From the NCBI GenBank assembly GCA_023213395.1, contig CM041465.1, forward strand, positions 58,907,741 to 58,971,740: a DNA stretch of 64,000 nt, read 5' to 3'. The stretch comes from Cycas panzhihuaensis (Eukaryota; Plantae; Cycadophyta). The notes beneath the pieces were generated by a model. The model did no database searches. It saw only the letters and a list, made by a program, of their open reading frames with translations, and had not been told where the DNA came from. Both the position numbers and the translations under genes were made by a program. Below, piece by piece: positions 1 to 45,674 of the stretch (positions within the stretch are counted from its first letter, which is position 1; the number at the start of each line of letters is the position of its first letter).

Positions 1-383
1 TGAGAAAACAATGGTGAAAAAGGCCCCTTCATGGCTCCAAAGATTTCTAAAAGGACCAAAAGGAAGTCAAAAAAAAAAGGAGGGAAGCGCTTCCTTTAGG
101 AGCCTCAAAGGCTTGAACAGGCAACAAAAATGGATCCAGAGTGGCGAAACGAGTCAAAGGAGTATAAACATAGGTATGTTTTGGGGCAATGCAAAAAACG
201 AGATAAAAGGGATCTGGAGGAGGCTGGAGAGGTCATCATAAATATGCCAAAAAGCTAGAAATGGAAGCCATGGAGGTGAAACAGAAGATGGACCTAGAAG
301 ACAAAGGTGATAAGGCTAAGAAAGCGATCTCAAGGGCTATCATGGCAAGGGAAAAGGAGAAAGTACCCCTCAGGGCCCCTGCG

Positions 384-391
384 TATATAAA
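384..391 (+). promoter_or_regulatory. Putative TATA box of element B's PMD gene
   Basis: TATATAAA ~165 bp upstream of ATG 552; equivalent TATA in A (14232-14226, -) and C (44712-44706, -). Confidence 0.55.
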
Positions 392-2078
392 GGAAGGAGG
401 GTGAAAATGAGATTCATTGTCACGGGCTTGTGATCGATCTGGAGCCCTTCCTTCTGCAGAGCAGAGTCTTACCTGACTTCAGGAGCACAGAGCGAGAGAT
501 TCGATCATTGGATCAAGGAAAAGAGATAGCCAATATAATCAAGACGATGAGATGGTAATGGTGATGTTGGATTTAGTAAGTTGATCGTCCCCTATCCCCT
601 TCATTTCATTGTTTATGTTTAGTGGCTTTTTGAGGTTTTTGTAGCTTGGTTTAGGCCCCTTAAGGGTGATTTAGGACCCTCTGGAGCTTGAACGAGGCCC
701 AGAGTGGGGGACAACTAGGGCATTAGGTAGCCCTGGTCCTACTGGGCTAGGCCTTAGCCCACTCAGACAAACTTTTGAGGTCTATTGGGCATCCCCCTCT
801 CCCCCTCCCTTTTTATAGGGGGAAACAATGGCCTTGCAGCAAAGATCACAGTGCCACAGAGTTTGCCGCAGGGTTGTTGATGGGACATGAGAACCTCAAT
901 GGGGCTCGTGTTAAACTTCATGGTACCACAGAGTTTGATGTGGGGCAGAGAGGACATAGTGGAAAAAAGAAGAAAAGAGGTCCATGGGGATGGCTAACTC
1001 AACCTACTGGAGCATGAGACGTCCTAAGGACGACTAAGCATGGTATAGAGAGTATTTGGACTGATACTCATGTCATTTTACAGGTGGTTCTTGTGATCGA
1101 TAATTGCGAGAACATATGAGTCACGATGATGAGATTCATAGAGATGATGTTACAAGGAGACAGGTAGATATTGAGATGTTGTGGGCTCTTGAAGATCATT
1201 AGGATGCCCCAATATGCGTTAGACCAGCATCTCCTAATGGATATAGTCTCTCACTGGGATTGTAGACAATACGTTTTCCACTTCCCCTGGGTAGGAGATG
1301 TGATTGTCATACTAGGGGACATCAAGAGGATTTTAGGGGTACCAATACGATAAGCGCCAGCATCGTTAGGTACATTGCCTAGCACAAACGTTACACACAC
1401 AGAGGCAGCGACATACTTCACAGGCTAGGGTAGGTAGGATCGATGAGGGGTGTCAGTGCAAACTATGGTGATGTCCAGGATTCCTCGAGTGAGTAAGTTC
1501 ATTACACTAGGCATTTTGTTTTGGATCTCCCAGAAATAGAACTACATGGATATTCTATGCAGATGGATGGTGTTTCATGGCTACCAGGAATGGACTTGAG
1601 ACAAGCAGGCTCAGGTAAGCACAGGTATATACTTCTCACTTTTATCCTCACTTTCGCTTGTTAGAAGTTGTTTAGAGTATTGTTTGATGCATGTTTGCTT
1701 GCCTTTTATGTGATCGCATTGCCTTCTCTGCTTGATCACGTTGCTTGCACCTGCCGCACACTATTTAGCCTATGACGACCCACCATGGAGCACTCCTTAG
1801 TGAGTCATGCACCCCATATGGCACTCAGTTGCATGTAACACCTCCACAACTCCTTAAACATTGTTGTTGGTAGCGATCCGCTCACATCAGCACTCCTATC
1901 ACCACTTTGAGCCCTCTTCTAGGTGTGATAGGACCTCTCTGAGACTTGTTTCTCTCTTTCGGCCATTTGCGAGCTACTTGGGCATGAGCTCCCAGCCTGC
2001 TAGGCCTTTGCACACCCCTCTGTTTGGCTCTAGGCCTTGGTTTTAACCTTATTTTGGCTTTTAGTCATGCACTGCTGC

Positions 2079-2134
2079 AAACTAAGTGGTACCGTGAAGT
2101 TTGCCATGGTGCCACAAAGTTTGCTGCGGTGCGG
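2079..2134. promoter_or_regulatory. Palindromic GGTACC-core motif array (20-bp period) in LTR U3
   Basis: AAACTAAGTGGTACCGTGAAGTTT with cores at 2088, 2108, 2128; same array in the 3' LTR at 16058, 16078, 16098. Regulatory role is inferred. Confidence 0.5.
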
Positions 2135-2259
2135 CTGTCTAAATTTATTTTCTTTAATCCATCATGGAAATTCTCACTCTTTTCGCAGAATTGCCATGTG
2201 GTGCCTTCGATTACTCACCCCCACCATAACCCTAATCGTTCGTTTAGGGTTGGGATGAG

Positions 2260-2266
2260 TATAAAA
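2260..2266 (+). promoter_or_regulatory. Putative LTR TATA box
   Basis: TATAAAA followed by a pyrimidine-rich leader; conserved in the 3' LTR (~16230). Confidence 0.55.
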
Positions 2267-4289
2267 CCCAAAAATGAATTCATTTTGCTCTCTTCTTCAC
2301 TCATTTTTGCTCTCTACTCCTTACATTCTGCCATTTCCCCCAGATCTACTCCTCTACTCTAGCTCCTCTTTCACAGGTGCATCTACTGCATCTCAGGCCC
2401 TGCTGCAGCGGCTCCAAGCTTCCCTTTGCAGGTCCTATCCATGGAAGGAGAATACTCTCAGTGCGCTAGCAAACAAGCTCTAAGGACTAAGAGCGACGTC
2501 CACGTTTTGCCTCCCCTTCAGCCCAAGTCTGAAATGCCTTCTTGACATAAGTTTTTCCTCTGGTTTTTGGAAGAAAAGGACTCTCCTCTTCTACCCTATA
2601 GGTACCCTTTCAACATCCCTTAGGTTTTCCTGTGATTTCTTTCCTTTATGAGAAGTTCTTTGGTCAATTTTTGCTCCTCTCTTTTCACTCCGAAGGAGCT
2701 TGTCTCTTTGCTTCCTGTCCTACACTGTTTTTCCTCTCTTTTCCTGCAAGCCTACTCTAGGGTGGCTGTGTAAGAGGGTTGCATAAGGTTGGGTGAAGGG
2801 AGAAAGGCGGGATCCATCCCCTTGTTGGCCTTCTGCCCAAGGGTTTACCCTTCCCTTCCTTCCTCTTCTACTCTGTGCCTCCCTCTGGAGTTGGGTTAGG
2901 GATAGCAAGAGGCTTATCTCAGTTCTAAATCAGCATTGGTAGCCCTCGCCACACTAGTTTCAAACTTGCACCCCTGAGTTTTAGGCATCACAAAAGCCCC
3001 AAAACCTGTCTCGGTTCAGTTTTGATCTTTAGATTGCCCCAACGTGATGATTTGCTGTTTGTAGCACCTTGTCCCTTGGGTCTACCCGTGCACCATCTCG
3101 TTGGTTTGTTATCTCTTCTACTTACTGTCCAGAATAGCCATCATACTCTTGTCTTTTCCCATTGAGGCTATGTGGAGGTATTTACGGGTAGGTTGGCCAT
3201 TCCGAGGCTAACCTTCCTATCTTAGTTATTACTTAGCACTGCTTAGATCTGAGATTTGTTTGGTGGTTTTTGGAGTAGAGTGCATTACCTTTTAGCTTGA
3301 TTTATTAGCCATCTTTTACATTTATATACATATTAGATGTACTTAGCAGCCCCCTTCTCTGGAAGGGAGAAACCTTTTCTTGTAATTGACAGGTTCACGG
3401 CGACAAAAGCACGGAAGAGGTGGACTTCTTTGATAGGTAAGCCCTTCGCTAGTGGTGCTTTCAGTTTCTTCCTTGTCTCCTTTTTTTGCTATTTTGCTTT
3501 CACATATCAGGGAAGGTACGGTCACCCCTCATCCATTTTAGCAACCATCGCCAACTAGTCCCACACCCATGTAGCAAGTTCAAGTGGACGAGTGCAAAAG
3601 GAGTGAAAGGGTGCGACGTTTCAGCCATGCTTCACTTCTAGGTACGCCTCCTCCCTTTCTTGTCTCTTTTTTGTGCTTTTGATGTTTACTTGCAAACTTT
3701 GCATGATAAGTCACATAAGAAACAAAAGAGAAATGAACACATCTTTTGCATTCATAAGCTCTTTTCTTTTTGTAATCGTTTACTTCGTATGTAGATAGGA
3801 TTTAGACATGAACCGTGTACTCTTTAAGCCCCATCTCATCCATATGTAAGACAATTTGTCCCTTAGTCTTGCCTTTGATACTTCGCACACTCTTGCTTGA
3901 CATACTACATAACAACCTAATCCTAGTCTACATCCCTCTCCTACTTGAGCTAGGTCGTCACATATCACATGTACCTACTTGCACGTTGCCTTCTCCCTCC
4001 TGTGAGAAGATGCAACCTTCTAGAGTCCCCCCTCCTCTTCCCAGCCATCCAAGGGGTAGGTGGGCCTCCTCCTTTAGGGCAACCTAAGGCCTTGCCTTGC
4101 ATCCTCCTTCCAAAGGTTATCCTAAGGTAATTGGGCACCATTCGTGGGTCCCGAACTCGTGCTCTGATGCTCGGACGCCTTGCATGGTGTTCTTTCTTAC
4201 CATTAGGATCCCATCCATAACTCGACCACTACCATTGATAGTTTATTCCCTTCTAAGTATAGAAGACCATCCCGTAGATGCGAATCCAT

Positions 4290-4307
4290 TGGCGACCATA
4301 CTAGGGA
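4290..4307 (+). other. Primer binding site of A (tRNA-Arg type)
   Basis: TGGCGACCATACTAGGGA, 1 nt after the LTR end; TGGCGAC start is typical of Tat/Ogre tRNA-Arg PBS. Confidence 0.8.
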
Positions 4308-4484
4308 CCTATCAGTAGGGGAGCTAGTCTCGTTTCTCTTTCTGTTGGTGCTATTACTTTCTGGTAATCTTCCTTATTTCCCCTTTCTATTGGGCAGCCC
4401 CCAACATGTGCTTCATACCCCCTTTCCTTCTAACAACTTTGGCAAAGGCGTTACATACGACGTTTCTCATGTCATTTACGAGGT

Positions 4485-7400
4485 TTGCCACCTTTGTTAG
4501 AAGACCTTTCATATCACCTACTTCCATCGTCAGATTCTGATTCAATAATGGAGGGCTATCCTTCTGACTGGGCATATCACACCTTCACTTCGGAAACTCA
4601 TGAGCTCCCTACATCATTCCCAAGGTCTACCCAAGATGGTAGTGACCCTATTTACTATCCGGGTGATCAACATCACCCGCTTGATGCCCATCCCTCTACC
4701 CACGTAGTAGAGGATTCATCTTCTCATGAGACTCACCTCCTAGGGGGTGATTCTTATGAGGAGCACCTTGAGGGGTCTACTTCATTTGAGATCCCGTCTA
4801 CCTCCTACGATCATGTAGTCACCCCTCCCCTTGACATGGTTAAAGCTCTCAATGAGTGCTTCTAAGCTACTCATCTTCAAACACGTTCTAGGTGGTTTGA
4901 AGATGTTTTGCGTGGTGGGACGTCTTCCTCATCCATATCCATTCCACCATCTTCATCTGCACCTACTCCTCCTACAACTAGTAACCCTTTCGTACCTTCA
5001 CACCAATCCCAGTTGCTTTCCACGTCTTCCTTGGGAACAACCATTACACCTCCTACCTCCCACCATGGTCCTAATACTTCGGGACCTCCTCATGGCATAT
5101 CTTTCTCCCAGCTAGGAGTTAGCTTGCCTTTTCCCAGCCAAGCCAACGTGCCACCTCCTAATATGGCACACGCATTCCCTAGTATGCCTAGAGGTCCTAC
5201 TAGCACCCCTTTCATTAGTCATGTGGGGCCTGCCCTCACATGGACTCAAATGCAACCCAACGATCCATCTCTTTACATACCCCCATGTTGTACATCTCAA
5301 CCTTAAGGGCAGGGTAAAGGGAACCCATTCCGCTTTATGGGGTGGACCCTCTTCACCCATATGGGGTCGTGCCTCCTACAGGTGGCCCATATGGACAAAA
5401 CCCCATCTCTTATTCTACATTTCCATCATCCTACATAGTCCCTCATGCTGTGCCTTCGTAAGAAAACTAGGTTTCTTTCCAAGGCACTTATCCACAAATC
5501 CCTTCTCAGCAAGGGACGTTTCCTCAAGGAGGGATGGGCCTTCCTCCTCCATCCGCTCCTTGTCCAGTTCCTCTTACTTCATTTGCCGATCCTATGATCC
5601 AAGCAAGGGCACGGCCCTTCATGGATTACAGGTTGACACCACTATCCGTTGAGATGCTAAGAACTAACTTACCACCTCATCCCCCTGAAGTTCCCAAATT
5701 CGATGGAACTTCGTCGCAAGACCCAACCGAATACGTGCGTAGTTTCTCTATGGTGTGCATTGATTACTAGGCTTACAACCACATATTGATAAAGCTATTT
5801 CCATGATCTTTATAGGGTGATGCCCTTAAGTGGTTTTATCACCTCCCTGCCCACTCTATCTTCTCATTCCAGCAATTGGTGGGCGAATTCATCAACTACT
5901 TTGATATAACTCGTCTATTCGAAAGCAGAATGAAATCCCTCCTTTCGCTCAAACAAGGTCATGATGAAATGAATCATGACTTTGTGCGACGATTCCATGA
6001 CCTCCTCCATTCCACCAAGGCTACCTTGCCTGAGGAATTGAAGAGGGATCTCTTCGTTAATGTACTGTGTCCCGAAGTCTATATAGAAGTCCTCAAGATG
6101 GGAGCAACTACGTGTGACTCCACTATTGTGAAGTGCTTAGCGTTAGAGGCTATTGAGATCCAAGCTGGACTCAAAAGGCCTCCCAAGCCCTCATAACATC
6201 GTGAGGTACCTCCCTCAACCAAGAAAACTAAACCTTCACAACCCACCAGGTCTACTTCTCACCTGACTGAGAAGACTTTAGACCCCCTTACTTCTGCCAT
6301 ACGCTTATTCGAGCACATGATGAAGGAGCTTAAACTTTAAGCCCCTTCATCACCAATGACGAACAAACAAATTCAATAGGCTTCTCAAGCTGCTCCTCCT
6401 AAGGGGGGTAATACCCAACCTTCTCAAGCAAAGAAAGCAGATCCTTCACTTGAGAAGAAGTGGTATTCCATCAATGGGGAGTGCTTCCATGATGACTCGC
6501 GTTGTCGGGTGCAACACCCTCGTGATGTCCCATAATGTGATTCGTCTCCTAGGCAGGCCTCGAGGCCCAATCTTGATCAACCCATCCATAAGGATCTATT
6601 CCCCAAACATGGGGAGTGTGATCGCAATACTCAACAAAGAAACAACCGAAACCAGGGTAGACCCCCTAATTCTCATCCTTCACACGGTAGAGGGAAGGGT
6701 GCATGAGATTCATCATCCTCCTCGCATTCCCCTAACCGCCATACTCCTTCACATTTGTGATCCTGCAATAAGAGAAAGAAGGTAATTTAGATGCTTGAGG
6801 CCACTCCCCTATATGCCCTAACTTAGTCTCAAGCTGCGAAAGAGGTAGCTGGCACCTCTACATCTACATCACACCTTGATCCTCCTCTGGAAGTCATTCC
6901 TCTGGAAATACCTTCGCTTCCCAAGAACATTCTCATCCACCCCGGTTGCTTCAACTTTAGGAGAGCCCTTACCCAACCCACAGGGAAGGGTAAGCCATTT
7001 TCCATAGTTGAAGAGCTTCACACCGTGGCCATCGGGATGTCCATCATGGATGTCTTGAAAAGCTATCCTAAGCAACAAACGCTCCTTCTGGAGGCTTTAG
7101 GGTTAAACAACGCGCCCGTTCACGCTTTGGGCATTGCCCAAGGTCGTAAACCCATCATCTCCTTTGATCCTAAAGATCTTCCCCCAGTTAGTGAAAGGCA
7201 ACGCTAATGGAACTTCCCTTTCACCATCACCATAGACACACATGATTGTACCTTGCGAAGGAACGTCGTTGACAATGGTTCTTCTGTTAATGCTATGCCC
7301 TTGCGTATCATGCAAGAGCTTGGCATCTCTGGCTTGGAACCCGTTCCATGGCAATGTCAAGGCTACGATGGTAGCGAGAAGACTCCTTCGGGGTCTGTCT

Positions 7401-10400
7401 CAATACCTCTCACTCTCGAGGATAAGACCATCCTCACTGACATCATTGTCCTTGATGTGGACATTAATTACAACCTCCTCTTGGGTCGACCATGGTTTGA
7501 CCAAATGGGAGCCGTGTGTTCCACCTGTTGGGGGAAATTTAAGTTTGTCCATAATGGGCAAATGAGAGTTGTCTCCCACGAGCGACCACCCGCAAAACGA
7601 ACCAGACCACCCACTCAAGTAAGCCATGGCCATACAAAGGGGAGTAAACGCCCTTCTACTTACACCTTAGCTTGCTCCATCGGTATTCTCGATCCTTCTA
7701 GCTATGAAGAAGATCCTACATCTTCTTATTCAAGTCTAACCCATTTCACCCCTATTAGTATTGGAAGCTACGGGTACCTCGTCATGTTTAGCAATGATGG
7801 GTCCCATGGCGAGGACGAGGACCTCCCTCACCCAGTTTCCTTCCTTCACGCTAGTAGGGGGTATTCTTCTCGTTCTAGGTCCCAACTTAGGACCCCTCTT
7901 GTTGAAGAGCCCAATCACTCTCTCATGTCACATGTTATTGCACGTGTTAACAGTCAGACCCCTGGCTCTTCCCTTCCATCACCTCTCACAAGTGATGGTG
8001 TCAAGAGTTTTCCTTATGCCTCTTACGAGAGGCCTTTCCTCGACTCTCCCTTAGAATCCCTTAGGGATGTTGGGCAGCTTACGGGTCATCCTGGTCCTAT
8101 TGCTCCCATTCCATCTTACACCTCATCCATTTGAAGTAAAGTCATCCATGGGGTGGATTACTTCGAAGACGACGAGGCCTTGCTAGAGCACTTAGCAGGC
8201 TCCACACCCAACTTACCTTCTGGTCACCATAAGCTTGGCCACCAGAAGGTCCTGGTGATTGGATCCACATTAGCCAACCCAATCCCATCCTCCATTCCAT
8301 CTCCTCCCGTTGACCTTACCCCTCTCTATTTCGAGGAGGGGAACTCCATGTGTATGGGAGCAACTCAGGACATAGTCCTCACCCTGGGCAAGGTCATTAA
8401 GGTAGGGGCAGAATGTACCCCTAATAAAGCAAGAGAATACTCCCTTTTGTTCCAAGAGTTTCGAGATGTCTTCATGTGGGACTACTTTGACATGAAGGGA
8501 ATTGACCCTTCCATTGTCACCCACAACCTCACCACTATTCCTGGCACTCGCCCTGTGTGCCAGAAGTAGCATCCTCTCCATCCTAAACTCTCGGCCACCG
8601 TCAAGATGGAGGTTGAGAAACTCTTGGATGTAGGACTTATCACTTCTATCAACTACCCCAAATGGGTATCAAACATCGTCCCCGTTGCCAAGAGGAATAG
8701 GACCATCCAGATATGTGTTGATTTTTACAACATTAATAATGCATGTCCCAAAGATAACTTCCCACTCCTCTTTATCGATCAAATCATCAATCGAACCGCT
8801 GGATTTGAAGTCATGTCCTTGATGGATGGCTTCTCTGGTTACAACCAGATATAAATTTCTTCTGAAGACCATCATAAGACGGCCTTCACTACTCCATGGG
8901 GTACTTTTGCCTACAAGGCAATGCCTTTCAGAATTAAAAATGCAAGAGCCACATACTAGAGGGCTATACATTTTATTTTCCATGACCTCATCAACAACAC
9001 ATTAGAGGTCTTTATGAATGACATGATGGGTCTCTCGCGTACTAAAGCTCATCACCCTTCAGACTTGTGGGCCATCTTCACACGATGCCATAAGTATCAT
9101 GTTAGTCTCAACCTGCTTAAATACATGTTTGTTGTTACTTCTGGCAAACTCTTGGGGTTCCTTATGTCAAAGTAAGGGATCCAAATCGATCTAGATAAAG
9201 TTAAGGCAATCCTTGACATACCTCCTCCTAGAACGCAATGACAAATCAAGTCATTTCTAGGTAGGCTCAGTTTCCTTAGGTATTTTTTGGCAAACTTCGC
9301 CATAAATGCCAAACCCCTTACCAACCAATTAAAGAAAGGAGCCCCATTTGTTTGGTCGATTAAGGCCCAACAAGCCTTTGAAGGACTAAAGGAAGCACTC
9401 ACCTTTGCTCCAACGTTGGCGCCTCCTCGCTTTGATAGGCCCTTCATCTTGTATACCTCGGCAACCGATGAATCCTTGGGCGCAATGCTCATGCAAGAGG
9501 ATGATTTAGGAATTGAGAGAGTGATCTATTTCATCAGCTGTACCCTTGTGGCTGCTGAGCTTAACTATCACCCCATCGAGAAGGAATGTCTCTCCTTGGT
9601 CCATGCGACCAAGAAGTTCAGACATTATTTACTTAGAAACACTACCAAGGTGATCGTCTAATCTGATCTCCTGCGCTTCTTACTTAATCGATCTGACCTA
9701 ACTGGTAGGACTGGTTATTGGGCCATCGTACTCCAAGAGTTCAACCTTCAAATCATTAATAGGAAGTTGAAGAAGGGAATGATAGTGGCAGAGTAACTAG
9801 CCGATGCCCCTATTCCCAACATATGCGACGTTCCCGTTGATAATTCTCTCCCTGACGAGTCTATCCTGACCAGCCAAGGCACCTCTCCTCCTCCGCTCAC
9901 TGATAGTGAGTGGTATGATGACATTGTGCGGTATCTCACTTAGTAGCAATACCACCCTGAAGCTAGAAACAAAGTCAGGTCATGCATCTGCGCCACCGCT
10001 AGACTATACTTCCTCATAGACGAAGTGTTGTATAAAAGATCCTTTGATGGGATCCTTCTTCGCTGCATCGCTTTGGACGAAGCGGACCATATACTCTGCG
10101 AATGCCATCATGGAACTTGTAGGGGGCACTTTGGGGGCCAATCCATGGCCCAAAGGATCCTCTGCATGGGCTATTATTGGTCGTCCCTTTTCAAGGATGC
10201 CCATGCCTATGCCCTGAGATGTTGATGATGCCAAGAGTATACCAATATATCTCACGTGCCTTCCGAGGCCCTCCATCTTATCATATCTCTATGGCCCTTT
10301 GCTCAATGGGGTTTAGACCTCATTCGTGCCATATCACCACCTTCTTCGTCACAACACAAGTACATCTTAACTGCCACATAGTATTTCACAAAATGGGTAG

Positions 10401-11155
10401 AGGCAATCTCTCTGTCTATTACGCCTGGCAAGACGACAACCACCTTCGTCTACCAACACATCATTTGCCACTTCAGGATTCCAAACGTCTTGATCACAGA
10501 CAATGGAACCCCCTTCTGTAACAAGGAGATGGATGAGCTTGGTGAGAAGTTCAAGATTTCTCATAAGACCTCGTCTCCTTATTACCCTCAAGCAAATAGA
10601 CAGGTTGAATCATTCAACAAAACCCTTATTAACATTCTAAAGAAAACTGTCACGCAATCTCAAAGAGATTAGCATCTTTAGCTCCCTTCCACCTTGTGGG
10701 CCTATCGTACTTCTCTCCGTATAGCTACTAGAATGACACCATTCTCCTTAGTCTACAGAACCGAGGTGGTACTCCCACTGGAAGTGGAGATCTCCTCTCT
10801 ATGAGTCTCCCTTAGAGGTCTTATCGATGAGGAGTCTATCTGTCAGGCTTGCCTCTTAGACCTCGAGGCTCTGGATGAGAGATGTTTAGTAGCTTACCAA
10901 GCAAACCTCGCTTCGAAAGCCCACTCATAAAGGACTTACAACAAATATCTTCGTACCTGTCCTTTATACCCTAGGGACTACATCCTCAAGCTAGAATATC
11001 TCCATGATCTCCTAACCAAATTTGGGCCTAAATGGATTGGTCCCTTCATAATTCTTGAGAGCCTTGATAATGGCACTTATAGGATTGCCACCTTACAAGG
11101 CCTGGAATTTGAGAAGGCGGTCAAGGGAAAATTCCTCAAGAAATTTTATGCATGA
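4485..11155 (+). pseudogene. gag-pol polyprotein of A (gag, aspartic protease, RT, RNase H, integrase) with many stops and frameshifts
   Basis: gag PKFDGTSSQDPTEY..LKQG; protease VVDNGSSVN..LLGRPW; RT WVSNIVPV..CVDF..PKDNFPL..MDGFSGYNQI and FMNDM (decayed YMDD); RH YTSAT..NYHPIEKE; INT HHG..GH, ITDNGT, YPQAN.QVE, GPKWIGP. Start approximate. Confidence 0.95.
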
Positions 11156-11902
11156 TCCTCTCGGTGATCCCTTTGCCACGCTCTGAAATGAGCCTAAACT
11201 ATCGCCCTAAGCTTGTTCGCATTCCCCCTACCCTTAGGTGGAATGGATAGCTTAGGTCCTCATTCTTTTTTGTTCCTTCCGTAGGACCCTTGTTCCCTCT
11301 TTCTTGGGAACCTCGCCTCCATGTTTGGCCATCCCCCAATTAGGGTGACTCTTGAGGTGTCGTCACTTCCTCCCATCGCTATTTCCTTTGCATATCCCGC
11401 TATGCTCCCATGTGGACATGCATGTCACCCTGTCTCTTAGCCTTGCGTGTAGCCATCGCTACTACTCGTGGTGATCATATGTATCCCTACTAGAGATATA
11501 GTCCTACATGAAAGGAAATATACGTCTAGCTCATAATGAATAACACATCACATCCACATCAAAAACAAGCATAACTCTAGCTATACGATAGTCAAAACAT
11601 CACCTACTACATCATCATGCATCCGTGCATACTCACACTCATATACATATACTCTTATATGTACATACCAAGACCAAAACATCATAAACATACATATCCA
11701 TTGTGCATCCATTGCAATGTATACCACAAACACCATCTCATACGTTAAATGGGATACCAATCACCCCATCTATATACACAAAATCAATCCTCATAACATA
11801 CAAATGATAGTACATCATCCATGGGAAGCCGGTGTCCTTGCATGGGGGGTACAATCCTATGTCTCTACATGGTGACCCCCTGGAGGCCCATGCTTTCCCT
11901 CA

Positions 11903-14063
11903 TCACATCCTAACCTGCATCATACCCGACTGCTGCCCCTCTCCGGAGGCGTCATCTCCTGGTCGGTGTGATCTCTCTCCTGGGGACCACATGCCTCCTA
12001 GACTTCTCTGTAGCCTCCGGGAGCTCCCAGCCTCGTTTCCCCCATCGCGTGGCCTCCTCGGTGTCATCGCCGCTGTGTAGGTATGTGTCCTGTTCTGGCT
12101 CAACCTTGACGTCACTTGATCCACCAGCTGATCGTATCGAGCCTAGATATGATCTCTCTCACCCTCTACTCCCCAGAGTCTCTCCTCCATGCTCCGGAAC
12201 TTCTCCTCCATCCCTCGGAGATGCTCCTAAGGGAACATCTCCCTCACCACAACCTCCACCAACCATTGGATCTCTGTAGTACCTGTAAACCCAACATGCT
12301 ATATGTTAGTATATATCTAGCCACATACCAAACTGAAACCAAATCAAAGCGTGTGAGCATCTGGCTATCAAACAACGAGGAAAGTAAGGCCTCACCTACT
12401 GCGGTACCGGCTCCTCACTTTGTCTGATGGCCTCGCCTGCAGCACTCCACCCATTGCTTGGTGCCTCCTCCTATGCAACTACCTCCACTGCTAGAGCTTG
12501 CATCCCTCCCTTTCCTGGTGGAGCTATCCCCCTACGTCTCTCCACAATCCTCAATCTCTGAGCTCATGTCACAGGCCCCCTCATCTCCTTGACAGTCCCT
12601 GATGGGCCTGCCTCCTCTATAGCTCATGATGGGCTGGCCCCATCTCCTCCATCGCCTCCATCTCCTCCATCACTGCCGTCATCGTCTCCGGGGGCAACTC
12701 CTACCACTCCTGCTTCCTCGTCACTATCCCATCTCATCGCTCAATAGGGATCTGAGTTGTAGTCAGTCATGGTAAGGAGATCTAGCGACATAGCGTCCAC
12801 GGACCTCCTGACGTGTGCTTGATCCTCAACTCCCCTAAACTGGGTTTGCCATTTGTGTACCATGGGTGCCCACTCTAATATGGGGTGTGGTCCCCCTGGT
12901 GGTGCCATTGCTACAAAGTGATTGAAGAACCAGCACTGCAAGAGGGTGCTGTAAGACAATCCACCTCTACCCGCCATCCTAATAGCGTCCAACTGAGCGG
13001 CAAGGTTCACCGCTACGAGGGTGGCCCAATCCAATTGCTCCCCAGCGTTACACCTCTGTACCGCATCGATCCAGCGACCTGGGATGTCTCTATAGTTCTA
13101 TTTCTGGGATATCTGGAACATAAGGCATAGTGTGATCAGCTTCCTCACACGAGGAATCCCAGATATCACCATACTCTGCAGAGGCACTCCTTACCTCTCC
13201 CACCTGTCTTGGCCCATAAAAAACATAGCTGCCTCTCGATGGGCTGCCTTGTTGCTAGGCAATGCTCCTAGCGAGGCTAGTCTCCCTGTCACTGGCAATC
13301 CAAGGATCCACCAGATATGTTTGGGTGTCACTGTCACGTCCCCTACTTGGGGCAGATAGAACACGTGTCTCCGCCTGTCCCAATGCGACACGATGTCTAA
13401 CAACAACCTCTGATCCGATATGTACTGTGGCATCCTTGTGACCTTCAGTAGGCCACATCGCGCCAGGATCTACCGATCCTCCCTTATCATCAACTCTATA
13501 AAACTCAACATAGCCATACCAATGTTCTCGTGGTTCTCCACTGCGATCACCACCTGTAAAAGGCCATCAAATGTGTCAATCTATAGCCAACACCTACTCT
13601 CGGCCTCTTAGGGCTCTCCCTCAGCCTCATTTGGTCGAGACTTGGGGATGCTTGGGGCCTCCTTTTCATTTTTCACTCATTCTATCTTCGCACCGCGTTA
13701 AACTTCGTGGTACCGCTGAGTTTAGGCCAGGTCCCACGACGATCAGGGCCCCGCGGCAAAGATTGTGGCACTGCGATCTTTGCTATGGTGCAAACATCGC
13801 CCCCTAAAAGGGGGGGTTCCCAGACCCAAAAAACCCCAAAAATTCCTTGTGGTAGGCCACAGTTAGGTCCAATAGGACTAGGGCTGCTTAATGCCTTGGT
13901 CCCGCCCCTCTCTGTGTCTAATTCAGACTCTGGGAGGTTATTTTTCGCCCTTAAGGGGCCCAAAAATTACATTAAAATTTCATAAAAAAGAATCAAAACT
14001 CAAATGTGATTTCGAGAGGGGTTTTGGCAATCCACTCACTGGATTAGGCCGTGCGGTTATCAT
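11903..14063 (-). pseudogene. Antisense three-exon PMD gene of element A
   Basis: Exons 14063-14040, 13553-12396, 12282-11903 with GT-AG introns. PMD motifs LLLDIVSHWDRRRHVFYLPQVGDVTVT..ILGLPVTG and DWATLVAVNL...LLQCWFFNHF, then an acidic/Gly/Arg low-complexity tail. Contains stops. Confidence 0.85.
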
Positions 14064-14772
14064 CTCGCTCTCCCAGTCGCACTGGCTGCCTCCTCGCTTC
14101 GATCCAATGGCCAGATCTCTCACTGCGTGTCCCGAAAATGGGGTAGTGCTCCGCTGCATAAGGAACGAGCTCTGGATTTCGTACGAGAGCTCGTGAAAAT
14201 GAAATCCTTTTTCGTTCGAGTTTTCTTATATAGGCAGGGCCCCCCTTGGGCACTTCCTCATTTTTCGCCTTTAAAGCAGACTTTAAGACCACATTTTTGC
14301 CCTAGCCAACATTGCTTTCTGGCCCAGTTCCTCTTTTTCTCTCCGTGGTCTCCTTTCGATCGTTTCTCTCGATGCATTAATGATGCCCCAAGTGGCTCAT
14401 TTTTGTCGAAGCCCCCCTTATCTCGTTTTGCGTGCCACTCCCATGCATGCCTGAGTTTATACTCGTTTGGCTCATTTCGCTGTCCTAGACTCGCTTTCAC
14501 AACCTATTTTTGCTCTTAGCACTCCCATAGGGAGTGTCCCCTCTGGCCGGGCACCCCTTTGTGCTTCCTTAAGCCAGTTTGGGCACCCTAAAGGCCCCTT
14601 TTTCCACCATTTTCTTCCCCATTGGTGGGGTAGCTTTCCCTACCTTTAGGTCACCTCATTGCCAGGCCTTCATACCCCTTCATGGCTATCGTTACTAGCC
14701 ACATAGGGTCCTCTTCTTACCTCTTTCTTCAGTTATATTGCACTTCTTTCAGCAAAGAAGTCGTTCTTACTC

Positions 14773-15180
14773 ACGGCTCTTTTCATTTTCACCGATGGCA
14801 GAAGCCACGGTAATCCTGGTCCTTCTACAACCGCATGGATAATCTGTGATTCCTTTAGGCATGACTACCTATGCTCTAGAATCTTCCTTCCTGAGGCAAC
14901 CAATAATGAAGCTGAGTAAACGGCCATTATTAAAACCTTCACCAACATATTACGTTTCTATCACATACCCGTCATCCTTCTTTGCGACTCCCAAGTAGTG
15001 GCGTCTCATCTCATCCAAGTTACCAGGTGTGGTACCTATGCTTGAGAGCCTTAGCGTCGATCGTGAGGTCACTATTGGCTCACTTCTAGTCCTTCGACAT
15101 TTGCCATATTCCTCGGGCCCTCAATGCTGAGGCTGACAGCCTCGTTCGCCTCATCCTTGAGCATCGCCTCCCTCTTCTCA
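14773..15180 (+). pseudogene. Free-standing archaeal-type RNase H (aRH) of element A
   Basis: Translates to FIFTDGRSHGNPGPS...ATNNEAE*..A...CDSQVV...HIPRALNAEADSL; one stop, a frameshift, and ACG where C has ATG. Confidence 0.88.
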
Positions 15181-15549
15181 GTGACTACCTTTGAGAGACT
15201 TGCTTGGCCTGCCCGTTGCCCAAGTCTCTGGCTGCCTTTCTCCCAACTTGTTTGTCTAGTCTGTTGGTTGTCCTTATATTATCCATTGCATTTTAGTGAT
15301 GGGGGCATCCCCCCTTTTTCATTCCTTTCATCTTCAGGTCGACTTCCAGATGACACATAGGCAGCCCCTATGTTGCCCTCGTCTTTGTTTCCCTTATCTA
15401 TGCATTCCGCCACGACACTCACCGACACCCTTGGTCTATATTCTTTTCATGATTTATATATACACATGTGCTACTAACAGTTTTTGGTTGCCAACATTCG
15501 CCATCACACCATGCTTCCAAGCAGTGAGACTCTGCTGCCAATGGGACAG

Positions 15550-18261
15550 TGTTTCTCGGCTATCGGGAATGGACTTGAGACAAGTCAACTTAGGTAAGCA
15601 CATGTATATACTTCTCACTTTTATGCTCACTTTCGCTTGGTAGAAGTTGTTTAGAGTATTGTTTGATGCATGTTTGCTTGTCTTTTGTATGATCACATTG
15701 CCTTCTCTGCTTGATCACATTGCTTGCACCTGCTGCATACTATTTAGCCTATGACGACCCACCATGGGGCACTCCTCAGCGAGTCATGCATCCCATATGA
15801 CACTCAGCTACCCGCAACACCTCCACAACTCCTCAAATATTGTTGTTGGTAGCGATCTGCTCACATCAACACTCCTGTCACCACTTTGAGCCCCCTTCTA
15901 GGTGTGATAGGACCTCTCCGAGACTTGTTTCTCTCTTTCAGCCATTTGCCAGCTACCTGGGCATGAGCTCCCAGCTTGCCAGGCCTCTGCACACCCCTCT
16001 GTTTGGCTTTAGTTCTTGGTTTTATCTTTATTTTGGCTCCACTGCTACAAACTAAGCGGTACCGCGAAGTTTGTCGCGGTACCATGAAGTTTACTGCGGT
16101 GCGACTATCTAAATTTATTTTCTTTAATCCAACGTGGAAATTCTCGCTCTTTTCATGGAATTGCCATGTGGCACCTTCGATTACTCACCCCTACCATAAC
16201 CCTAATTGTTCGTTTAGACTTGGGATGAGTATAAAACCTAAAAACGAATTTATTTTGCTCTCTTTTTCACTCATTTTTGCTCTCTACTCCTCCTTACATT
16301 CTGCTATTTCCCCCAGATCTGCTCCTCTACTCTAGCTCCTCTTTCACAGGTGCATCTACTGCATCTCAGGCCCTACTGTAGCGGCTCCAAGCTTCCCTTT
16401 ATAGGTCCTATTCATGGAAGGAGAATACTCTCAGTGCACCAACAAGCAAGCTCCAGGGACTAAGAGCGGTGTCCACATTTTGCCTCCCTTTCAGCCTAGG
16501 TCTAAAAAGCCTTCTTGACACAAGTTTTTCCTCTGGTTTTTAGTAGAAAAGGACTCTCCTCTTCTGCCCTACAGGTACCCTTTCAACATCCCTTAGGTTT
16601 TCCTGTGATTTCTTTCCTTTATGAGAAGTTCTTTGGTTAATTTTTGCTCCTCTCTTTTCACTCCAAAGGAGCTTATCTCTTTGCTTCCTGTCCTGTACTG
16701 TTTTTCCTCTCTTTTCCTGCAAGCCTACTCTAGGGTGGCTGTGTAAGAGGGTTGCATAAGGTTGGGTGAAGGGAGAAAGGTGGGATCCATCCCCTTGTTG
16801 GCCTTCTCCCCAAGGGTTTACCCTTCCCTTCCTTCCTCTTCCACTCCGTGCCTCCCTCTGGAGTTGGGTTAGGGATAGTGAGAGGCTTATCCCAGTTCTG
16901 AAATCAGCATTGGAATCCCTCACCACACTGGTTTCAAATTTGCACCCTCAGGTTTTGGGTGTCACATAAGCCCCGAAACCTATCCCAGTTCAGTTTTGAT
17001 CTTTGGCTTACCCCAGCGTGACGATTTACTGTTCGTAGCACCTCGTCCCTTGGGTCTACCCGTGCACCATCCCGTTGGTTTGTTATCTCTTCTACTTGCT
17101 ATCCAGAACAGCCATCACACTCTTATCTTTTCCCATTGAGGCTACTTGGAGGTATTTACAGGTAGGTTGGCCATTCCGAGGCTAACCTTCCAATCTTAGT
17201 TATTGCTTGGTGCTGCCTAGATCTGAGATTTGTTCGGTGGTTTTTGGAATACAGTGCATTACTTTTTAGCTTAATTTATTAGCCATCTTTTACATTTATA
17301 TACATATTAGACGTACTTGGTAGCCCCCTTCTCTGGAAGGGAGAAACCTTTTCTTGTGATTGACAGGTTCACAGTGGCGAAAGCACGGAAGAGGTGGACT
17401 TCTTTGATAGGTAGGCCCTTTACTAGTGGTTCTTTCAGTTTCTTCCTTGTCTCCTTTTTTCGCTATTTTGCTTTCACATATAGAGGAAGGTAAGGTAGCC
17501 CCTCATCTATTTTGGTAACCATCTCCAACTAGTCCCACACCCATGTGGCAAGTTCGAGTTGACGAATGCAAAAGGAGTGGAAGGGTGCGATGTTTCATCC
17601 ACGCTTCACTCCCAAGTACGCCTCCTCTCTTTCTTGTCTCTTTTTTGTGCTTTTGATGTTTACTTGCAAACTTTGCATGCTAAGTCACATAAGAAACAAA
17701 AGGGAAATGAACACATCTCTTGCATTCATAAGCTCTTTCTTTTCGTAATTACTTACTTCATATGTAGATAGGACTTATATATGAACCGCGTACTCTTTAA
17801 GCCCCATCTCATCCATACGTAAGACGATTTGTCCCTTAGTCTTACCTTTGATACTTCGCATACTCTTGCTTGACATACTACATAACAACCTAATCCTAGT
17901 CTACATCCCTCTCCTACTTGAGCTAGGCCGTCATATATCACACGTACCTACTTGCACGCTGCCTTCTCCCTCCTGTGAGAAGACACAACCTTCTAGAGTC
18001 CCCCCTCCTCTTCCCGGCCATCCAAGGGATAGGTGGGCCTCCTCCTTTGGGGTAACCCAAGGCCTTGCCTTGCGTCCTCTTTCTGAAGATTACCCTAAGC
18101 TAATTAGGCACCATTCGTGGGTCCCGAACTCATGCTCCAGTGCACGGATGCCCTGCGTGGTGTTCTTTCTTGCCATTAGGATCCCATCTATAACCCAACC
18201 ACTACCATTGATAGTCTATTTCCTTCTAAGCATAGAAGACCATCCCGTAGATGCGAATCTA
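15550..18261 (+). repeat. 3' LTR of element A
   Basis: TGTTTC...GAATCTA, followed by TSD GATGG; preceded by a weak PPT (AATGGGACAG). Confidence 0.96.
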
Positions 18262-18920
18262 GATGGCTATGGTGAGGAGATACGAGGCCAGAGAGAGGTT
18301 GGATTAGGCTACCTTGATAGCGATAAATATGGTGGCACAGTTAGACATGATCCAAGTGGTAGGGAGAGGTAATTTTTCATATTTCACCCTACTGCAATAC
18401 TAGTTATTTGATTACTTTAGGGCAATGGCACCACCTAGAGGGCCTCATCGTATCTCAACATGAGTGCCCATGGTACATAGGTGGCAAACTTGGTTAAGGG
18501 GAATCGAGGATCAGGTACACATCAAGAGGTTCATGGAGGCAACATCCTTAAACCTCCTCACCCTGGCAGACTATACAATAGACCCATATTGGGGGGTGTA
18601 TTGGAATAGTGATGATGTAACATGGGAGTTGGGAGATGACCCAGATGAGGGTGGAGATGATGACAGAGGTGATGGGGCAGGCCTATTAGGAGTCACAGGA
18701 GGAGAGGTAGGTCCTTTAAGAGTTATAGGAGGAGAGGCAAATCCTTCAAGAGTTGTAGGAGGGGATAGGCCACTAGCACAGAGAGAGAGAGTAGCAGGTA
18801 GAGCTCCAGAGGCAGTAGTGGCAATGGCAGCAGCATGGAGACTAAAATAACCATAATAGATAGAGAAGAGGAGGTAGGACAGGCCCCAATAGCCCAAGAG
18901 ATAGGAGAGGTGGTATCAGA

Positions 18921-33494: not shown

Positions 33495-33705
33495 TGTTAG
33501 AAAAATAACTTGTAATGCACATTTGTAGTTAGCTTATAAGGTTCATATCTTTGTAATACTATACCATTAGTGGTCGAATTACTTTATGCTCATGAATTTA
33601 TGAGTATATAAACACTTTGTACTTTGTATTATTTTTAAGCAAGGTAAGGTATCTCATGATACCATTTTCGATCCTAGAGTTTTCATTTGAGTTGTAGATC
33701 TAATA
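33495..33705 (+). repeat. 5' LTR of D
   Basis: TGTTAG...CTAATA; about 12 mismatches versus 38956-39166. Confidence 0.96.
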
Positions 33706-45266: not shown

Positions 45267-45674
45267 ATGGCTCTACACATCTACATAGATGGCAGTAGTC
45301 ATGGCAACCCAAGACCTTCTGTTGTAACTTTGATCATCCATGATCTCATTGGGCATGATTTCATGCATTATGGGATCTATTTACCTAAGGCCATAAACAA
45401 TGAAGTGGAGTACAAAGCTGTAATTAAGGCACTAACTGATGTACTTTATTTACATCATGATCCTATCATTCTACACTATGACTCTCAAATTGTAGTGTAC
45501 GAGTTAACCCAAACTTATAAGGTCCTTTGTCCCAGATCGAGTACTCTAGCTACAACTGCTAGGTCTCTATTATCTTGCTTCTCCTTGGTTAATATTCAAT
45601 ATGTCCCTTGTAATCAAAATGCTAAGGCTAATAGCTTAGTCAACTTTATTCTCCAGCATCACCTTCAGCTCTAA
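45267..45674 (+). CDS. Free-standing archaeal-type RNase HI (aRH) ORF of element C
   Basis: Open frame MALHIYIDGSSHGNPRP..INNEVEYKAVIKAL..YDSQIVV..YVPCNQNAKANSL; D/E/D catalytic residues present, last Asp reads Asn. Confidence 0.88.
   Translation: MALHIYIDGSSHGNPRPSVVTLIIHDLIGHDFMHYGIYLPKAINNEVEYKAVIKALTDVLYLHHDPIILHYDSQIVVYELTQTYKVLCPRSSTLATTARSLLSCFSLVNIQYVPCNQNAKANSLVNFILQHHLQL

What the first reader, a model, noticed from the sequence alone, without database searches (positions are those of the whole stretch)
11903..15180. Head-to-head accessory cassette in a Tat retrotransposon: antisense spliced PMD gene and a stand-alone archaeal-type RNase H
Seen: between the integrase stop (11155) and the 3' LTR, element A carries a minus-strand PMD gene (ATG 14063) and a plus-strand aRH (start 14773) ~710 bp apart. 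Element C repeats the layout (ATGs 44640 and 45267), and B has the PMD gene plus the intergenic region at 1-550. A's pol has no aRH between RH and INT or between PR and RT. Known: Tat elements carry aRH at variable positions (downstream of INT in a gymnosperm clade, as I recall), and PMD-type extra ORFs occur in Tat/Ogre 3' regions. Inference: aRH is 3.6 kb from pol, cannot be part of the polyprotein, and probably shares a bidirectional internal promoter with PMD. That would be a two-gene module pairing a chromatin factor with an RNA:DNA-hybrid nuclease.
Basis: partly seen in the sequence, partly recalled or inferred. Interest (0 to 1): 0.85.

Follow-up and report, generated by a model that had tools for sequence, protein, structure and literature searches.

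The report
Known Tat retrotransposon accessory genes, decayed
The region is the tail end of an old, broken plant retrotransposon of a published type (gymnosperm 'TatIII' or 'post-integrase' Tat elements) that carries a backwards-facing PMD gene and a separate small RNase H gene; both once worked, but the layout is largely known and the shared-promoter idea is untested.

Summary
Element A (1571-18261, 2.7-kb LTRs 90.5% alike, 5-bp target duplication) has, between the pol stop (11153-11155) and the 3' LTR, a minus-strand PMD gene (14063 to 11903) and a plus-strand archaeal-type RNase H (aRH, 14773-15194). The same order recurs in elements B and C. In A both genes are pseudogenes. PMD has at least four in-frame stops. 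aRH has ACG where ATG should be, one stop and one frameshift. Only C's aRH (45267-45671, 135 aa) is intact.

Between the three copies, which are 54-65% identical in these coding blocks, both genes show strong purifying selection in the coding frame only. Both were therefore real genes of the active lineages. A short first exon and a phase-0 intron in PMD are supported by comparison.

The architecture is published. Reported features include aRH after INT in gymnosperm TatIII, an antisense PMD extra ORF, and aRH as a separate ORF ('structure #3', 'solo aRH'). What may be new is that PMD lies between INT and aRH, that it has an intron, and that it has a conserved TATA box.

The bidirectional promoter is untested. 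Conserved TATA motifs face PMD only, and no usable RNA data exist. The scan had already noted this cassette at least 30 times elsewhere in this genome.

The parts
1571..18261 (+). Element A: a full-length but degenerate Ty3/gypsy Tat-type LTR retrotransposon, 16,691 bp. It is flanked by the 5-bp target duplication GATGG (1566-1570 and 18262-18266) and is inserted into the PMD gene of element B.
   Evidence: Self-BLAST. LTR ends and target duplication read directly. Pfam hits to gag, RT, RH and INT.
1571..4288 (+). 5' LTR of A. It starts TG and ends CA. A primer-binding-site-like TGGCGACCATA follows at 4290-4300.
15550..18261 (+). 3' LTR of A, 90.5% identical to the 5' LTR.
11153..11155 (+). 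Stop codon (TGA) of pol/INT. B has TGA at the homologous position.
   Evidence: Alignment of A and B. The INT pieces hit Integrase_H2C2 and rve.
11903..14063 (-). The PMD gene, antisense to the element and a pseudogene in A. It runs from ATG 14063 to the stop at 11903-11905.
   Evidence: Pfam PMD hits in two colinear pieces. Frame-specific conservation against B and C. The protein atlas's nearest named cluster is PMD.
14040..14063 (-). PMD exon 1: ATG plus 7 codons, followed by GTGAGT. B has the same plan at 552-575 (+) and C at 44617-44640 (-).
13554..14039 (-). PMD intron 1, predicted: GT..AG, phase 0, 486 nt. The homologous introns are B 576-1083 and C 44191-44616.
   Evidence: Donor and acceptor are conserved in all three copies. 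Coding conservation starts exactly at the acceptor. Upstream of the acceptor the exon-2 frame meets a stop before any ATG in all three copies. There is no RNA evidence.
12657..13553 (-). PMD exon 2 onward, holding the plant mobile domain. In-frame stops lie at 13470-13472, 13191-13193, 13098-13100 and 12741-12743.
   Evidence: A-B per-site difference is 0.77-0.91 at synonymous sites and 0.24-0.25 at non-synonymous sites in the three main blocks. The 30-codon block 13101-13190 gives 0.42 and 0.18.
11906..12190 (-). Conserved C-terminal tail of the PMD protein, in a different frame from the domain body. An intron or an indel must lie between about 12200 and 12650; the structure there is unresolved.
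   Evidence: tblastx and tblastn against B (20136-20375) and C (42443-42556). Per-site difference 0.63 synonymous and 0.24 non-synonymous. No Pfam hit.
14225..14234 (-). Conserved TATA box (CCTATATAAG) about 165 nt upstream of the PMD ATG. B has it at 382-392 (+) and C at 44704-44714 (-).
14455..14464 (-). Second conserved motif, GAGTATAAAC, identical in A, B (160-169) and C (44920-44929). It is TATA-like in the PMD orientation.
14064..14772 (.). Spacer between the two divergent genes. Conservation is patchy: 57% identity A-B over the part B holds, against 38% for shuffled controls, and 48% A-C against 40%.
14773..15194 (+). aRH, an archaeal-type RNase H of the RVT_3 family and a pseudogene in A. 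It has ACG in place of the ATG, TAA at 14917-14919, a frameshift near 15018-15030 and a stop at 15192-15194. The DEDD catalytic residues are still readable across the pieces.
45267..45674 (+). aRH of element C: an intact 135-codon ORF with its stop codon. The fourth catalytic residue is N instead of D.
   Evidence: Pfam RVT_3 44.3 bits against a cut-off of 21.6, covering profile positions 3-122 of 123. Best solved relative is chain 4e19_A, E 8.6e-13. Alignment.
42443..44640 (-). PMD gene of element C. It is heavily decayed, with 14 stops in 247 codons of the domain part.
1..1570 (+). Element B, in minus orientation. This stretch holds part of the spacer, the PMD TATA box, exon 1, intron 1 and the start of exon 2. 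The gene continues at 18267 beyond the insertion of A, and its tail lies at 20184-20378.

Best explanation
The stretch 11903-15194 is the 3' accessory region of an old, dead copy of a gymnosperm-type Tat retrotransposon (REXdb TatIII; 'structure #3' or 'post-integrase'). It carries two extra genes in addition to gag-pol.

1. An antisense PMD gene with introns, an extra ORF of the 3'-reverse type. It has its own TATA-box promoter inside the element. Its first intron can persist because splice signals on the antisense strand are not read in the sense-strand genomic RNA (inference).

2. A 135-codon stand-alone aRH just upstream of the 3' LTR. It most likely supplies the catalytically competent RNase H for reverse transcription in trans. 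The native RH of Tat elements is reported to be catalytically degenerate, and in A it reads S for the first catalytic D and E for the last.

Shown here:
- the identity of both genes and their order;
- that the order is kept in three diverged copies;
- the past purifying selection on both genes;
- the conserved pol stop;
- the conserved splice-site and TATA motifs.

Inferred only:
- that PMD is transcribed from the internal TATA promoter, by analogy with gene23 of maize Grande;
- that aRH is expressed from a 3'-coterminal subgenomic mRNA. An internal sense promoter in the spacer and splicing of the LTR transcript are about equally likely, roughly one in three each, with the remainder for other routes.

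The two genes lie side by side most simply because the interval between pol and the polypurine tract is the only place where an LTR element tolerates cargo. They need not act together.
For: - Pfam PMD hits in colinear pieces. Pfam RVT_3 above its cut-off for C's aRH. Nearest solved structure is ribonuclease H1/HI, chain 4e19_A.
- Ty3/gypsy domain order.
- 5-bp target duplication and 16.7-kb size, matching the REXdb TatIII table: 5 bp in 92%, 12.7-17.3 kb, aRH in 92%, a 3'-reverse extra ORF in 18%.
- pol stop shared by A and B.
- The same gene order in A, B and C.
- Selection test (Nei-Gojobori counts). In the coding frame the per-site difference is 0.63-0.91 at synonymous sites and 0.23-0.37 at non-synonymous sites. 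In most other frames the ratio is near 1. The exception is the antisense frame that shares third positions with the coding frame, which gives 0.29-0.46.
- The exon 1 and intron 1 plan is conserved. The exon-2 frame cannot start without it.
- A TATA box is conserved about 165 nt upstream of the PMD ATG in A and B, and 64 nt upstream in C.
- Literature: PMC4408406, PMC6317226, PMC10508981, PMC13468544, and PMC7264820 for Grande gene23's own promoter.
Against: - There is no RNA evidence. The only run offered was a small set of contigs of uncertain type and showed no usable splice joints.
- The RT/INT phylogeny that formally defines the Tat subclades could not be run.
- The host organism is coded, so 'gymnosperm' is inferred from the architecture alone.
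- All the copies here are dead. Function is inferred from selection between families, not from any intact element.
- The degenerate native RH was read in one decayed copy only.
- Ustyantsev 2015 describes lineage III aRNH as the C-terminus of Pol, with the PMD ORF at the 3' end. That order differs from the one seen here.
Confidence: 0.85

Rival explanations
1. The roughly 0.7-kb spacer is a true bidirectional promoter that co-expresses PMD and aRH independently of the LTR, so the two genes form one functional module.
For: - The two genes diverge head to head at 710 bp in A and 627 bp in C.
- The spacer is conserved above shuffled controls, even though synonymous sites are saturated.
- Element C lacks RT, RH and INT but keeps both genes.
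- aRH is the only ORF in C without a stop.
- Grande gene23 is a precedent for an internal promoter.
Against: - Both conserved TATA-like motifs face PMD, and none was found facing aRH.
- Upstream of the aRH ATG, A and C are poorly conserved.
- The spacer's conservation could serve PMD alone.
- No RNA data exist.
- Adjacency is expected anyway, because cargo is tolerated only between pol and the polypurine tract.
Confidence: 0.3
2. aRH is expressed by splicing of the LTR-driven genomic transcript, like a retroviral env mRNA or the Ogre intron. An acceptor just upstream of aRH would remove the region that holds the antisense PMD gene. The product could then start at aRH's own ATG or be a fusion protein.
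For: - A pyrimidine tract followed by AG lies 15-21 nt upstream of the start in both A (…CTTCTTTCAG, ending at 14752) and C (…CCTTTTTCTAG).
- Both would be phase-1 acceptors, and the frame is open from there to the ATG.
- Splicing within a Tat element has been shown by experiment for Ogre (cited in PMC4408406).
- It would explain the 'controversial reports' of aRH as part of pol or as a separate ORF.
Against: - No conserved donor lies at the end of INT. B has GGTAAGT there and A does not.
- The plus strand is pyrimidine-rich throughout, so such acceptor-like sites are expected by chance.
- The ATG directly before the first beta-strand is kept in C and in the nearest database relatives.
- No RNA evidence exists.
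Confidence: 0.3
3. The layout is accidental. The PMD and/or RNase H pieces would be remnants of unrelated insertions, for example a MULE carrying PMD or a host RNase H fragment, and not genes of the retrotransposon.
For: - PMD also occurs in MULE transposons and in host genes (PMC4408406).
- Nested insertions are frequent in this window.
Against: - The same order, orientation, exon-intron plan and spacing occur in three copies that are 54-65% identical in the coding blocks.
- Both genes show frame-specific purifying selection between these copies.
- No terminal repeats or target duplications surround either gene.
- The scan noted the same cassette at least 30 times elsewhere in the genome, though those notes are unchecked.
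Confidence: 0.02

Closest known systems
TatIII (REXdb, Neumann 2019), also called lineage III (Ustyantsev 2015) and structure #3 or 'post-integrase' Tat H/I (Biryukov & Ustyantsev 2023; Prokopeva 2026), found in conifers, Cycas and Ginkgo
   Same: Ty3/gypsy domain order, aRH downstream of INT and outside pol ('solo aRH'), an antisense PMD extra ORF in the 3' region, a 5-bp target duplication, a size of about 15 kb and long LTRs.
   Different: The 2015 paper describes aRNH as the C-terminus of Pol, with the PMD ORF at the 3' end. Here PMD lies between INT and aRH, and the two diverge head to head. The PMD intron, the conserved TATA box and the selection test are not in the texts I could read; their figures are not held. 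Clade membership by RT tree was not tested.
gene23 of maize Grande (Retand/Tat lineage), an antisense 3' extra ORF
   Same: An antisense gene between pol and the 3' LTR, transcribed from its own promoter just upstream of the gene (PMC7264820). This is the best precedent for how the PMD gene here would be expressed.
   Different: The review notes no clear database similarity for the proteins of these antisense ORFs. Grande is an angiosperm element with aRH inside pol, so it has no divergent partner gene. Its promoter activity was shown by experiment; here it is only inferred from a TATA motif.
PMD plus coiled-coil extra ORFs of Ogre and lineage V Tat elements
   Same: A PMD-encoding accessory ORF in a Tat element. 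It is antisense and 3' in lineage V. A conserved C-terminal tail follows the domain.
   Different: Those are angiosperm elements with aRH between RH and INT. A coiled coil in the tail here was not tested, and the tail has no Pfam hit.
Retroviral accessory-gene expression, such as the antisense promoter in the HTLV 3' LTR (named in PMC7264820) and the foamy-virus internal promoter (from my own knowledge)
   Same: Cargo genes in the region between pol and the 3' LTR of a retroelement, expressed from promoters other than the 5' LTR or on the antisense strand. This is a 'works like' analogy only.
   Different: The proteins, hosts and lineages are unrelated, and no homology is claimed.
Host PMD proteins MAIN and MAIL1 of Arabidopsis
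   Same: They share the Pfam PMD domain. This is the only basis for calling the TE protein a 'chromatin factor'.
   Different: Those are host genes acting in silencing together with a phosphatase. No function has been tested for any TE-borne PMD protein.

Membership tests
TatIII / post-integrase (structure #3) Tat LTR retrotransposons | Ty3/gypsy domain order: gag, PR, RT, RH, INT | tested here: met
   Pfam hits to Retrotrans_gag, RVT_1, RT_RNaseH_2, Integrase_H2C2 and rve, in that order.
TatIII / post-integrase (structure #3) Tat LTR retrotransposons | An additional archaeal-type RNase H located downstream of INT | tested here: met
   aRH lies at 14773-15194 in A and 45267-45671 in C. RVT_3 scores 44.3 bits against a cut-off of 21.6. 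No aRH was found elsewhere in A's pol.
TatIII / post-integrase (structure #3) Tat LTR retrotransposons | aRH in an ORF separate from pol | tested here: met
   The pol stop is shared by A and B. An antisense coding gene lies in between. aRH has its own ATG in C, with in-frame stops 13-22 codons upstream.
TatIII / post-integrase (structure #3) Tat LTR retrotransposons | RT/RH/INT phylogeny places the element in the TatIII (Tat H/I) clade | not testable with these tools
TatIII / post-integrase (structure #3) Tat LTR retrotransposons | 5-bp target duplication and element size of 12.7-17.3 kb | tested here: met
   Target duplication GATGG and a size of 16,691 bp, against the REXdb table.
TatIII / post-integrase (structure #3) Tat LTR retrotransposons | Primer binding site complementary to tRNA-Arg (64% of TatIII) | tested here: inconclusive
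   TGGCGACCATA starts 2 nt after the 5' LTR. No tRNA gene in the window is available for comparison.
TatIII / post-integrase (structure #3) Tat LTR retrotransposons | Native RH with a degenerate catalytic core | tested here: inconclusive
   In A the first catalytic D reads S and the last reads E. This rests on one decayed copy and an alignment made by eye.
Plant mobile domain (Pfam PF10536) | A match to the PMD profile | tested here: met
   A's two colinear pieces score 23.4 and 28.0 bits at profile positions 8-61 and 129-242. B's piece scores 24.0 bits. Each is below the whole-protein cut-off of 34.9 because stops split the gene, and the joined protein was not searched. The protein atlas's nearest named cluster is 97% PMD.
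Type 1 RNase H, archaeal/RVT_3 type (aRH) | Profile match plus the DEDD catalytic residues | tested here: met
   RVT_3 covers profile positions 3-122 of 123. Best solved relatives are chain 4e19_A (ribonuclease H1/HI; I recall this entry as the Halobacterium enzyme) and chain 3u3g_D. D, E, D and D are readable in A's pieces. C has D, E, D and N.
Bidirectional promoter | Divergent transcription starts less than 1 kb apart, with transcription shown in both directions | not testable with these tools
   The spacing fits (710 and 627 bp). No RNA run was usable. Conserved TATA-like motifs face PMD only.

The most novel reading that the evidence does not exclude
The spacer is a real bidirectional promoter, independent of the LTR. 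PMD and aRH would then form a trans-acting two-gene module that elements keep even after losing RT, RH and INT, as C has done while keeping aRH as its only ORF without a stop. aRH would be a shared 'public good' RNase H for a whole community of Tat elements, co-regulated with a PMD protein that acts on the host. This would answer the published question of how an aRH outside pol can work.
Probability: 0.15. Interest if true: 0.55.

Novelty: new member of a known kind. Interest (0 to 1): 0.3.

Why it matters
The published literature leaves two points open. One is whether the post-integrase aRH is part of pol or a separate ORF (PMC13468544). The other is how an RNase H outside pol could serve reverse transcription (PMC10508981).

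These copies bear on the first point. An antisense gene under selection lies between INT and aRH, and pol ends at a conserved stop, so aRH cannot be read through from pol. The copies also show that both accessory genes were kept by selection while the families diverged by about 40% in sequence.

That is a useful refinement for people who annotate gymnosperm-type repeats. It is not a new kind of system.

Tried and rejected
- **The search for homologous proteins** with C's aRH returned no hit. The length window and word index probably miss these sequences.
- **The search of protein representatives** with C's aRH. The nearest relatives (61%, 52%, 48%, 45% and 43% identity) are short unnamed proteins on contigs of 0.6-3 kb. 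The other listed hits are 27-40% identical, and the two of them that carry a source name are ribonuclease HI. This supports the 'archaeal/prokaryote-like' type but gives no genomic context.
- **The look-up of sequencing runs and read laying.** One run of 50 million letters was offered, kept as contigs, with its RNA status a guess. It covers the family at mostly under 90% likeness, and its 'joints' have no GT..AG ends. This is no evidence for or against expression or splicing.
- **Sigma-70 and terminator scan**. It is not meaningful for a eukaryote.
- **An intron between the two shared stops at 13191-13193 and 13098-13100.** Rejected: the donor is not conserved in B, and the length would break the frame.
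- **A conserved splice donor at the end of INT.** Not found.
- **The three stops shared by A and B as inherited.** I consider parallel C-to-T decay of CAG, CGA or CAA codons more likely, because the gene shows purifying selection after the A-B split.
- **The spliced PMD model** was searched exon by exon or piece by piece, by reference only. The joined protein was not built or searched.
Full report
**What is in the window.** A self-comparison shows three related Ty3/gypsy elements.
- Element A lies on the plus strand. Its LTRs are 2.7 kb long (1571-4288 and 15550-18261) and 90.5% identical. It is bounded by TG..CA ends (the last CA reads TA in the 3' LTR) and by a 5-bp target duplication, GATGG, at 1566-1570 and 18262-18266.
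- A is inserted into element B, which lies in the opposite orientation (1-1570 plus 18267 to about 26285). The insertion site is inside B's PMD gene.
- Element C lies on the plus strand, from about 32365 to 46300. It is AT-rich and is interrupted by a 5.7-kb element with 212-bp LTRs (33494-39166).
- A's internal region reads gag (5816-6193), PR (from 7208), RT (8570-9172), native RH (9242-9658) and INT (9947-11152) by Pfam.
- All of these genes are broken by stops. The longest ORF in A's pol is 293 aa.

**The observation.** Pol ends at TGA 11153-11155, and B has TGA at the homologous codon.

*PMD, minus strand.*
- Stop-free pieces 13194-13469 and 12744-13097 match Pfam PMD colinearly, at profile positions 8-61 and 129-242.
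- B's piece 1168-1350 matches positions 1-56.
- The protein atlas places the larger piece beside a plant cluster that is 97% PMD.

*aRH, plus strand.*
- A 135-codon RNase H begins at 14773 in A and at 45267 in C.
- C's copy is an intact ORF and matches RVT_3 over the whole profile, at 44.3 bits against a cut-off of 21.6.
- Its best solved relative is ribonuclease H1/HI, chain 4e19_A, which I recall as the Halobacterium enzyme, at E 8.6e-13.
- Beyond a handful of short unnamed proteins at 43-61% identity, the listed hits in the 1.8-billion-protein library are 27-40% identical. The two of them that carry a source name are ribonuclease HI. That is what 'archaeal-type' aRH means in the Tat literature.

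- PMD has in-frame stops at 13470-13472, 13191-13193, 13098-13100 and 12741-12743.
- A's aRH has ACG where C and the nearest relatives have ATG. It also has TAA at 14917-14919 and a frameshift near 15018-15030.

**Were these ever real genes?** I compared the copies codon by codon without mending anything. Stops were skipped in the counts, or written as X for alignment.
- In the coding frame the per-site difference is 0.63-0.91 at synonymous sites, which is saturated. At non-synonymous sites it is 0.23-0.37. This holds for the PMD body, the PMD tail and aRH, and for all three pairs of copies in the PMD body.
- The same DNA read in most other frames gives ratios near 1. The exception is the antisense frame that shares third positions with the coding frame, which gives 0.29-0.46.
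- Both genes were therefore under purifying selection while the three families diverged to 54-65% nucleotide identity in these blocks.
- A's own decay since insertion accounts for only about 5% per copy, half of the 9.5% difference between its LTRs.

**Gene structure of PMD.**
- In all three copies an ATG is followed by seven codons and a GT donor: GTGAGT in A, GTAAGT in B, GTACAT in C.
- 426-508 nt further on, a pyrimidine run ends in AG (TTTTACAG in A and B, TTTTAG in C).
- Protein-level conservation starts exactly at that AG. The first 26 codons of exon 2 differ by 0.25-0.31 per non-synonymous site and 0.87-1.07 per synonymous site, with synonymous third-base changes visible by eye.
- Extended upstream of the AG, the exon-2 frame meets a stop after 0-22 codons without any ATG, in each copy. 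Exon 2 therefore needs the upstream mini-exon.
- The comparative support for a phase-0 intron at 13554-14039 is good, but there is no transcript evidence.
- A conserved C-terminal tail (12190-11906; B 20136-20375; C 42443-42556) lies in a different frame from the domain body. A second intron or an indel must lie between about 12200 and 12650. I could not resolve it, and B carries about 1 kb of extra sequence there.
- The exons were searched separately by reference. The joined protein was not built.

**The spacer and the promoter idea.**
- The spacer is 709 bp in A and 626 bp in C.
- A TATA box (CCTATATAAG in A, CGTATATAAAG in B, CCTATAAAAAG in C) lies upstream of the PMD ATG, on the PMD strand. 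The distance is about 165 nt in A and B and 64 nt in C.
- A second motif, GAGTATAAAC, is identical in all three copies and lies about 220 nt further upstream, also TATA-like on the PMD strand.
- The spacer aligns better than shuffled controls: A-B 57% against 38 ± 3%, A-C 48% against 40 ± 2%. With synonymous sites saturated, this argues for constraint.
- I found nothing equivalent facing aRH. The 200 nt upstream of its start are poorly conserved between A and C.
- Both copies do have a pyrimidine tract plus AG 15-21 nt upstream of the start, in the same phase. This would equally fit a splice acceptor of an LTR-driven subgenomic RNA. However, the plus strand is pyrimidine-rich throughout, and no conserved donor lies at the end of INT.
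- RNA evidence could not be obtained.
- An internal antisense promoter for PMD is therefore well motivated, and has a precedent in Grande gene23 (PMC7264820). A shared bidirectional promoter is an open hypothesis that I put at about 0.3.

**Comparison with what is known.**
- Ustyantsev et al. 2015 (PMC4408406) describe a gymnosperm 'lineage III' of Tat elements. In it aRNH lies downstream of INT and an antisense PMD extra ORF lies at the 3' end.
- Neumann et al. 2019 (PMC6317226) define TatIII by: gymnosperm hosts, aRH after INT, a 5-bp target duplication, 12.7-17.3 kb, mostly a tRNA-Arg primer binding site, and a 3'-reverse extra ORF in 18% of elements.
- Biryukov & Ustyantsev 2023 (PMC10508981) report aRH in a separate ORF ('structure #3') in conifers, Cycas panzhihuaensis and Ginkgo. 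They ask how it can work from outside pol.
- Prokopeva et al. 2026 (PMC13468544) call this structure 'post-integrase', with a 'solo aRH'. They mention conflicting reports on whether it belongs to pol.
- Element A meets every feature I could test: domain order, aRH position, separate ORF, target duplication, size, and an antisense PMD ORF. The RT phylogeny and the tRNA type of the primer binding site could not be tested.
- The pieces of the finding are thus published. Not stated in the texts I could read (their figures are not held) are: that PMD lies between INT and aRH, so that the two genes diverge; the mini-exon and intron; the conserved TATA box; and the selection test.
[quoted passage not shown] It favours the separate-ORF reading of the later papers.

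**How it most likely works.**
- The genomic RNA starts in the 5' LTR, and gag-pol translation stops at 11153.
- The native RH is probably catalytically dead. In A it reads S for the first catalytic D and E for the last, which fits the published 'tether-like' decay. This comes from one broken copy only.
- The stand-alone aRH would then supply RNase H activity in trans. It would be made from an mRNA that shares the 3' LTR polyadenylation site. The route, internal promoter or splicing, is undecided.
- PMD would be made from an antisense, spliced mRNA driven by the internal TATA promoter. Its introns survive retrotransposition because they are not introns on the sense strand.
- The role of the PMD protein is unknown. 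Calling it a chromatin factor rests only on host PMD proteins.
- Nothing indicates that the two proteins act together.

**Other copies in this genome.** The scan's first-stage readers noted the same cassette at least 30 times on other windows of this genome. Those notes are unchecked and were not counted as evidence. One of them (s1-822548) describes a family that lacks RT, RH and INT but keeps the cassette. Element C here fits that description.

**Verdict.** The classification as a Tat element with an antisense PMD gene and a stand-alone aRH is supported and already known. The bidirectional-promoter and functional-module readings are untested. Interest is modest.

Noticed in passing
window 1566-1570 and 18262-18266: Element A inserted into the PMD gene of the older, oppositely oriented element B, producing the target duplication GATGG. 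B's PMD reading frame runs on across the junction once A is removed.
   Followed up: yes
window 39167-46300 (element C), with 33494-39166 nested inside it: C has gag, PR, PMD and aRH but no detectable RT, RH or INT. Only about 1.5 kb lies between PR and the end of the PMD gene. A 5.7-kb element with 212-bp LTRs (94% alike) is inserted in C's gag region.
   Followed up: partly
window 45267-45671: aRH is the only gene of C without a stop. C's gag, PR and PMD carry 25 stops in 617 codons, so about 5.5 would be expected in 135 codons (P about 0.004; about 0.02 if only stop-prone codons are counted). The fourth catalytic D is N. This may be chance, or selection on aRH after insertion.
   Followed up: partly
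window 13470-13472, 13191-13193 and 13098-13100, and B's homologous codons: Three of A's four in-frame stops in PMD fall on codons that are also stops in B (TAG/TAG, TAA/TGA, TAG/TAG). Parallel C-to-T decay of CAG, CGA or CAA codons is the likelier cause, but inheritance from a common ancestor is not excluded.
   Followed up: partly
window 13101-13190 (minus strand): A 30-codon block inside PMD has far less synonymous divergence than its neighbours (0.42 per site against 0.77-0.91 for A-B). This hints at an overlapping constraint at the nucleotide level.
   Followed up: no
window 11156-11480 and B 20830-21213: The non-coding stretch just after the pol stop holds blocks that are nearly identical between A and B, for example AAATGAGCCTAAAC, TATTTCCTTTGCATAT and CTCTCTTAGCC. 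Mean column identity across the aligned stretch, which also takes in the last 116 nt of INT, is 78%, higher than A-B identity over the coding regions (65-72%). It may be a cis-acting element.
   Followed up: no
window 22093-22107 (element B): B lacks the equivalent of A's 8569-10277, that is the end of RT, the native RH and the start of INT. This is an internal deletion.
   Followed up: no
whole window: GC skew follows element orientation: about -0.2 over the plus-oriented A and C, and about +0.2 over the minus-oriented B. Contigs of run X1 mostly carry C or G where copy A has T or A, as expected if A has decayed by C-to-T deamination.
   Followed up: no
window 56884-57299 and 61814-62228: Another pair of direct repeats, 84% alike and 4.9 kb apart, lies in the AT-rich right part of the window. 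It is probably the LTR pair of a further small element.
   Followed up: no
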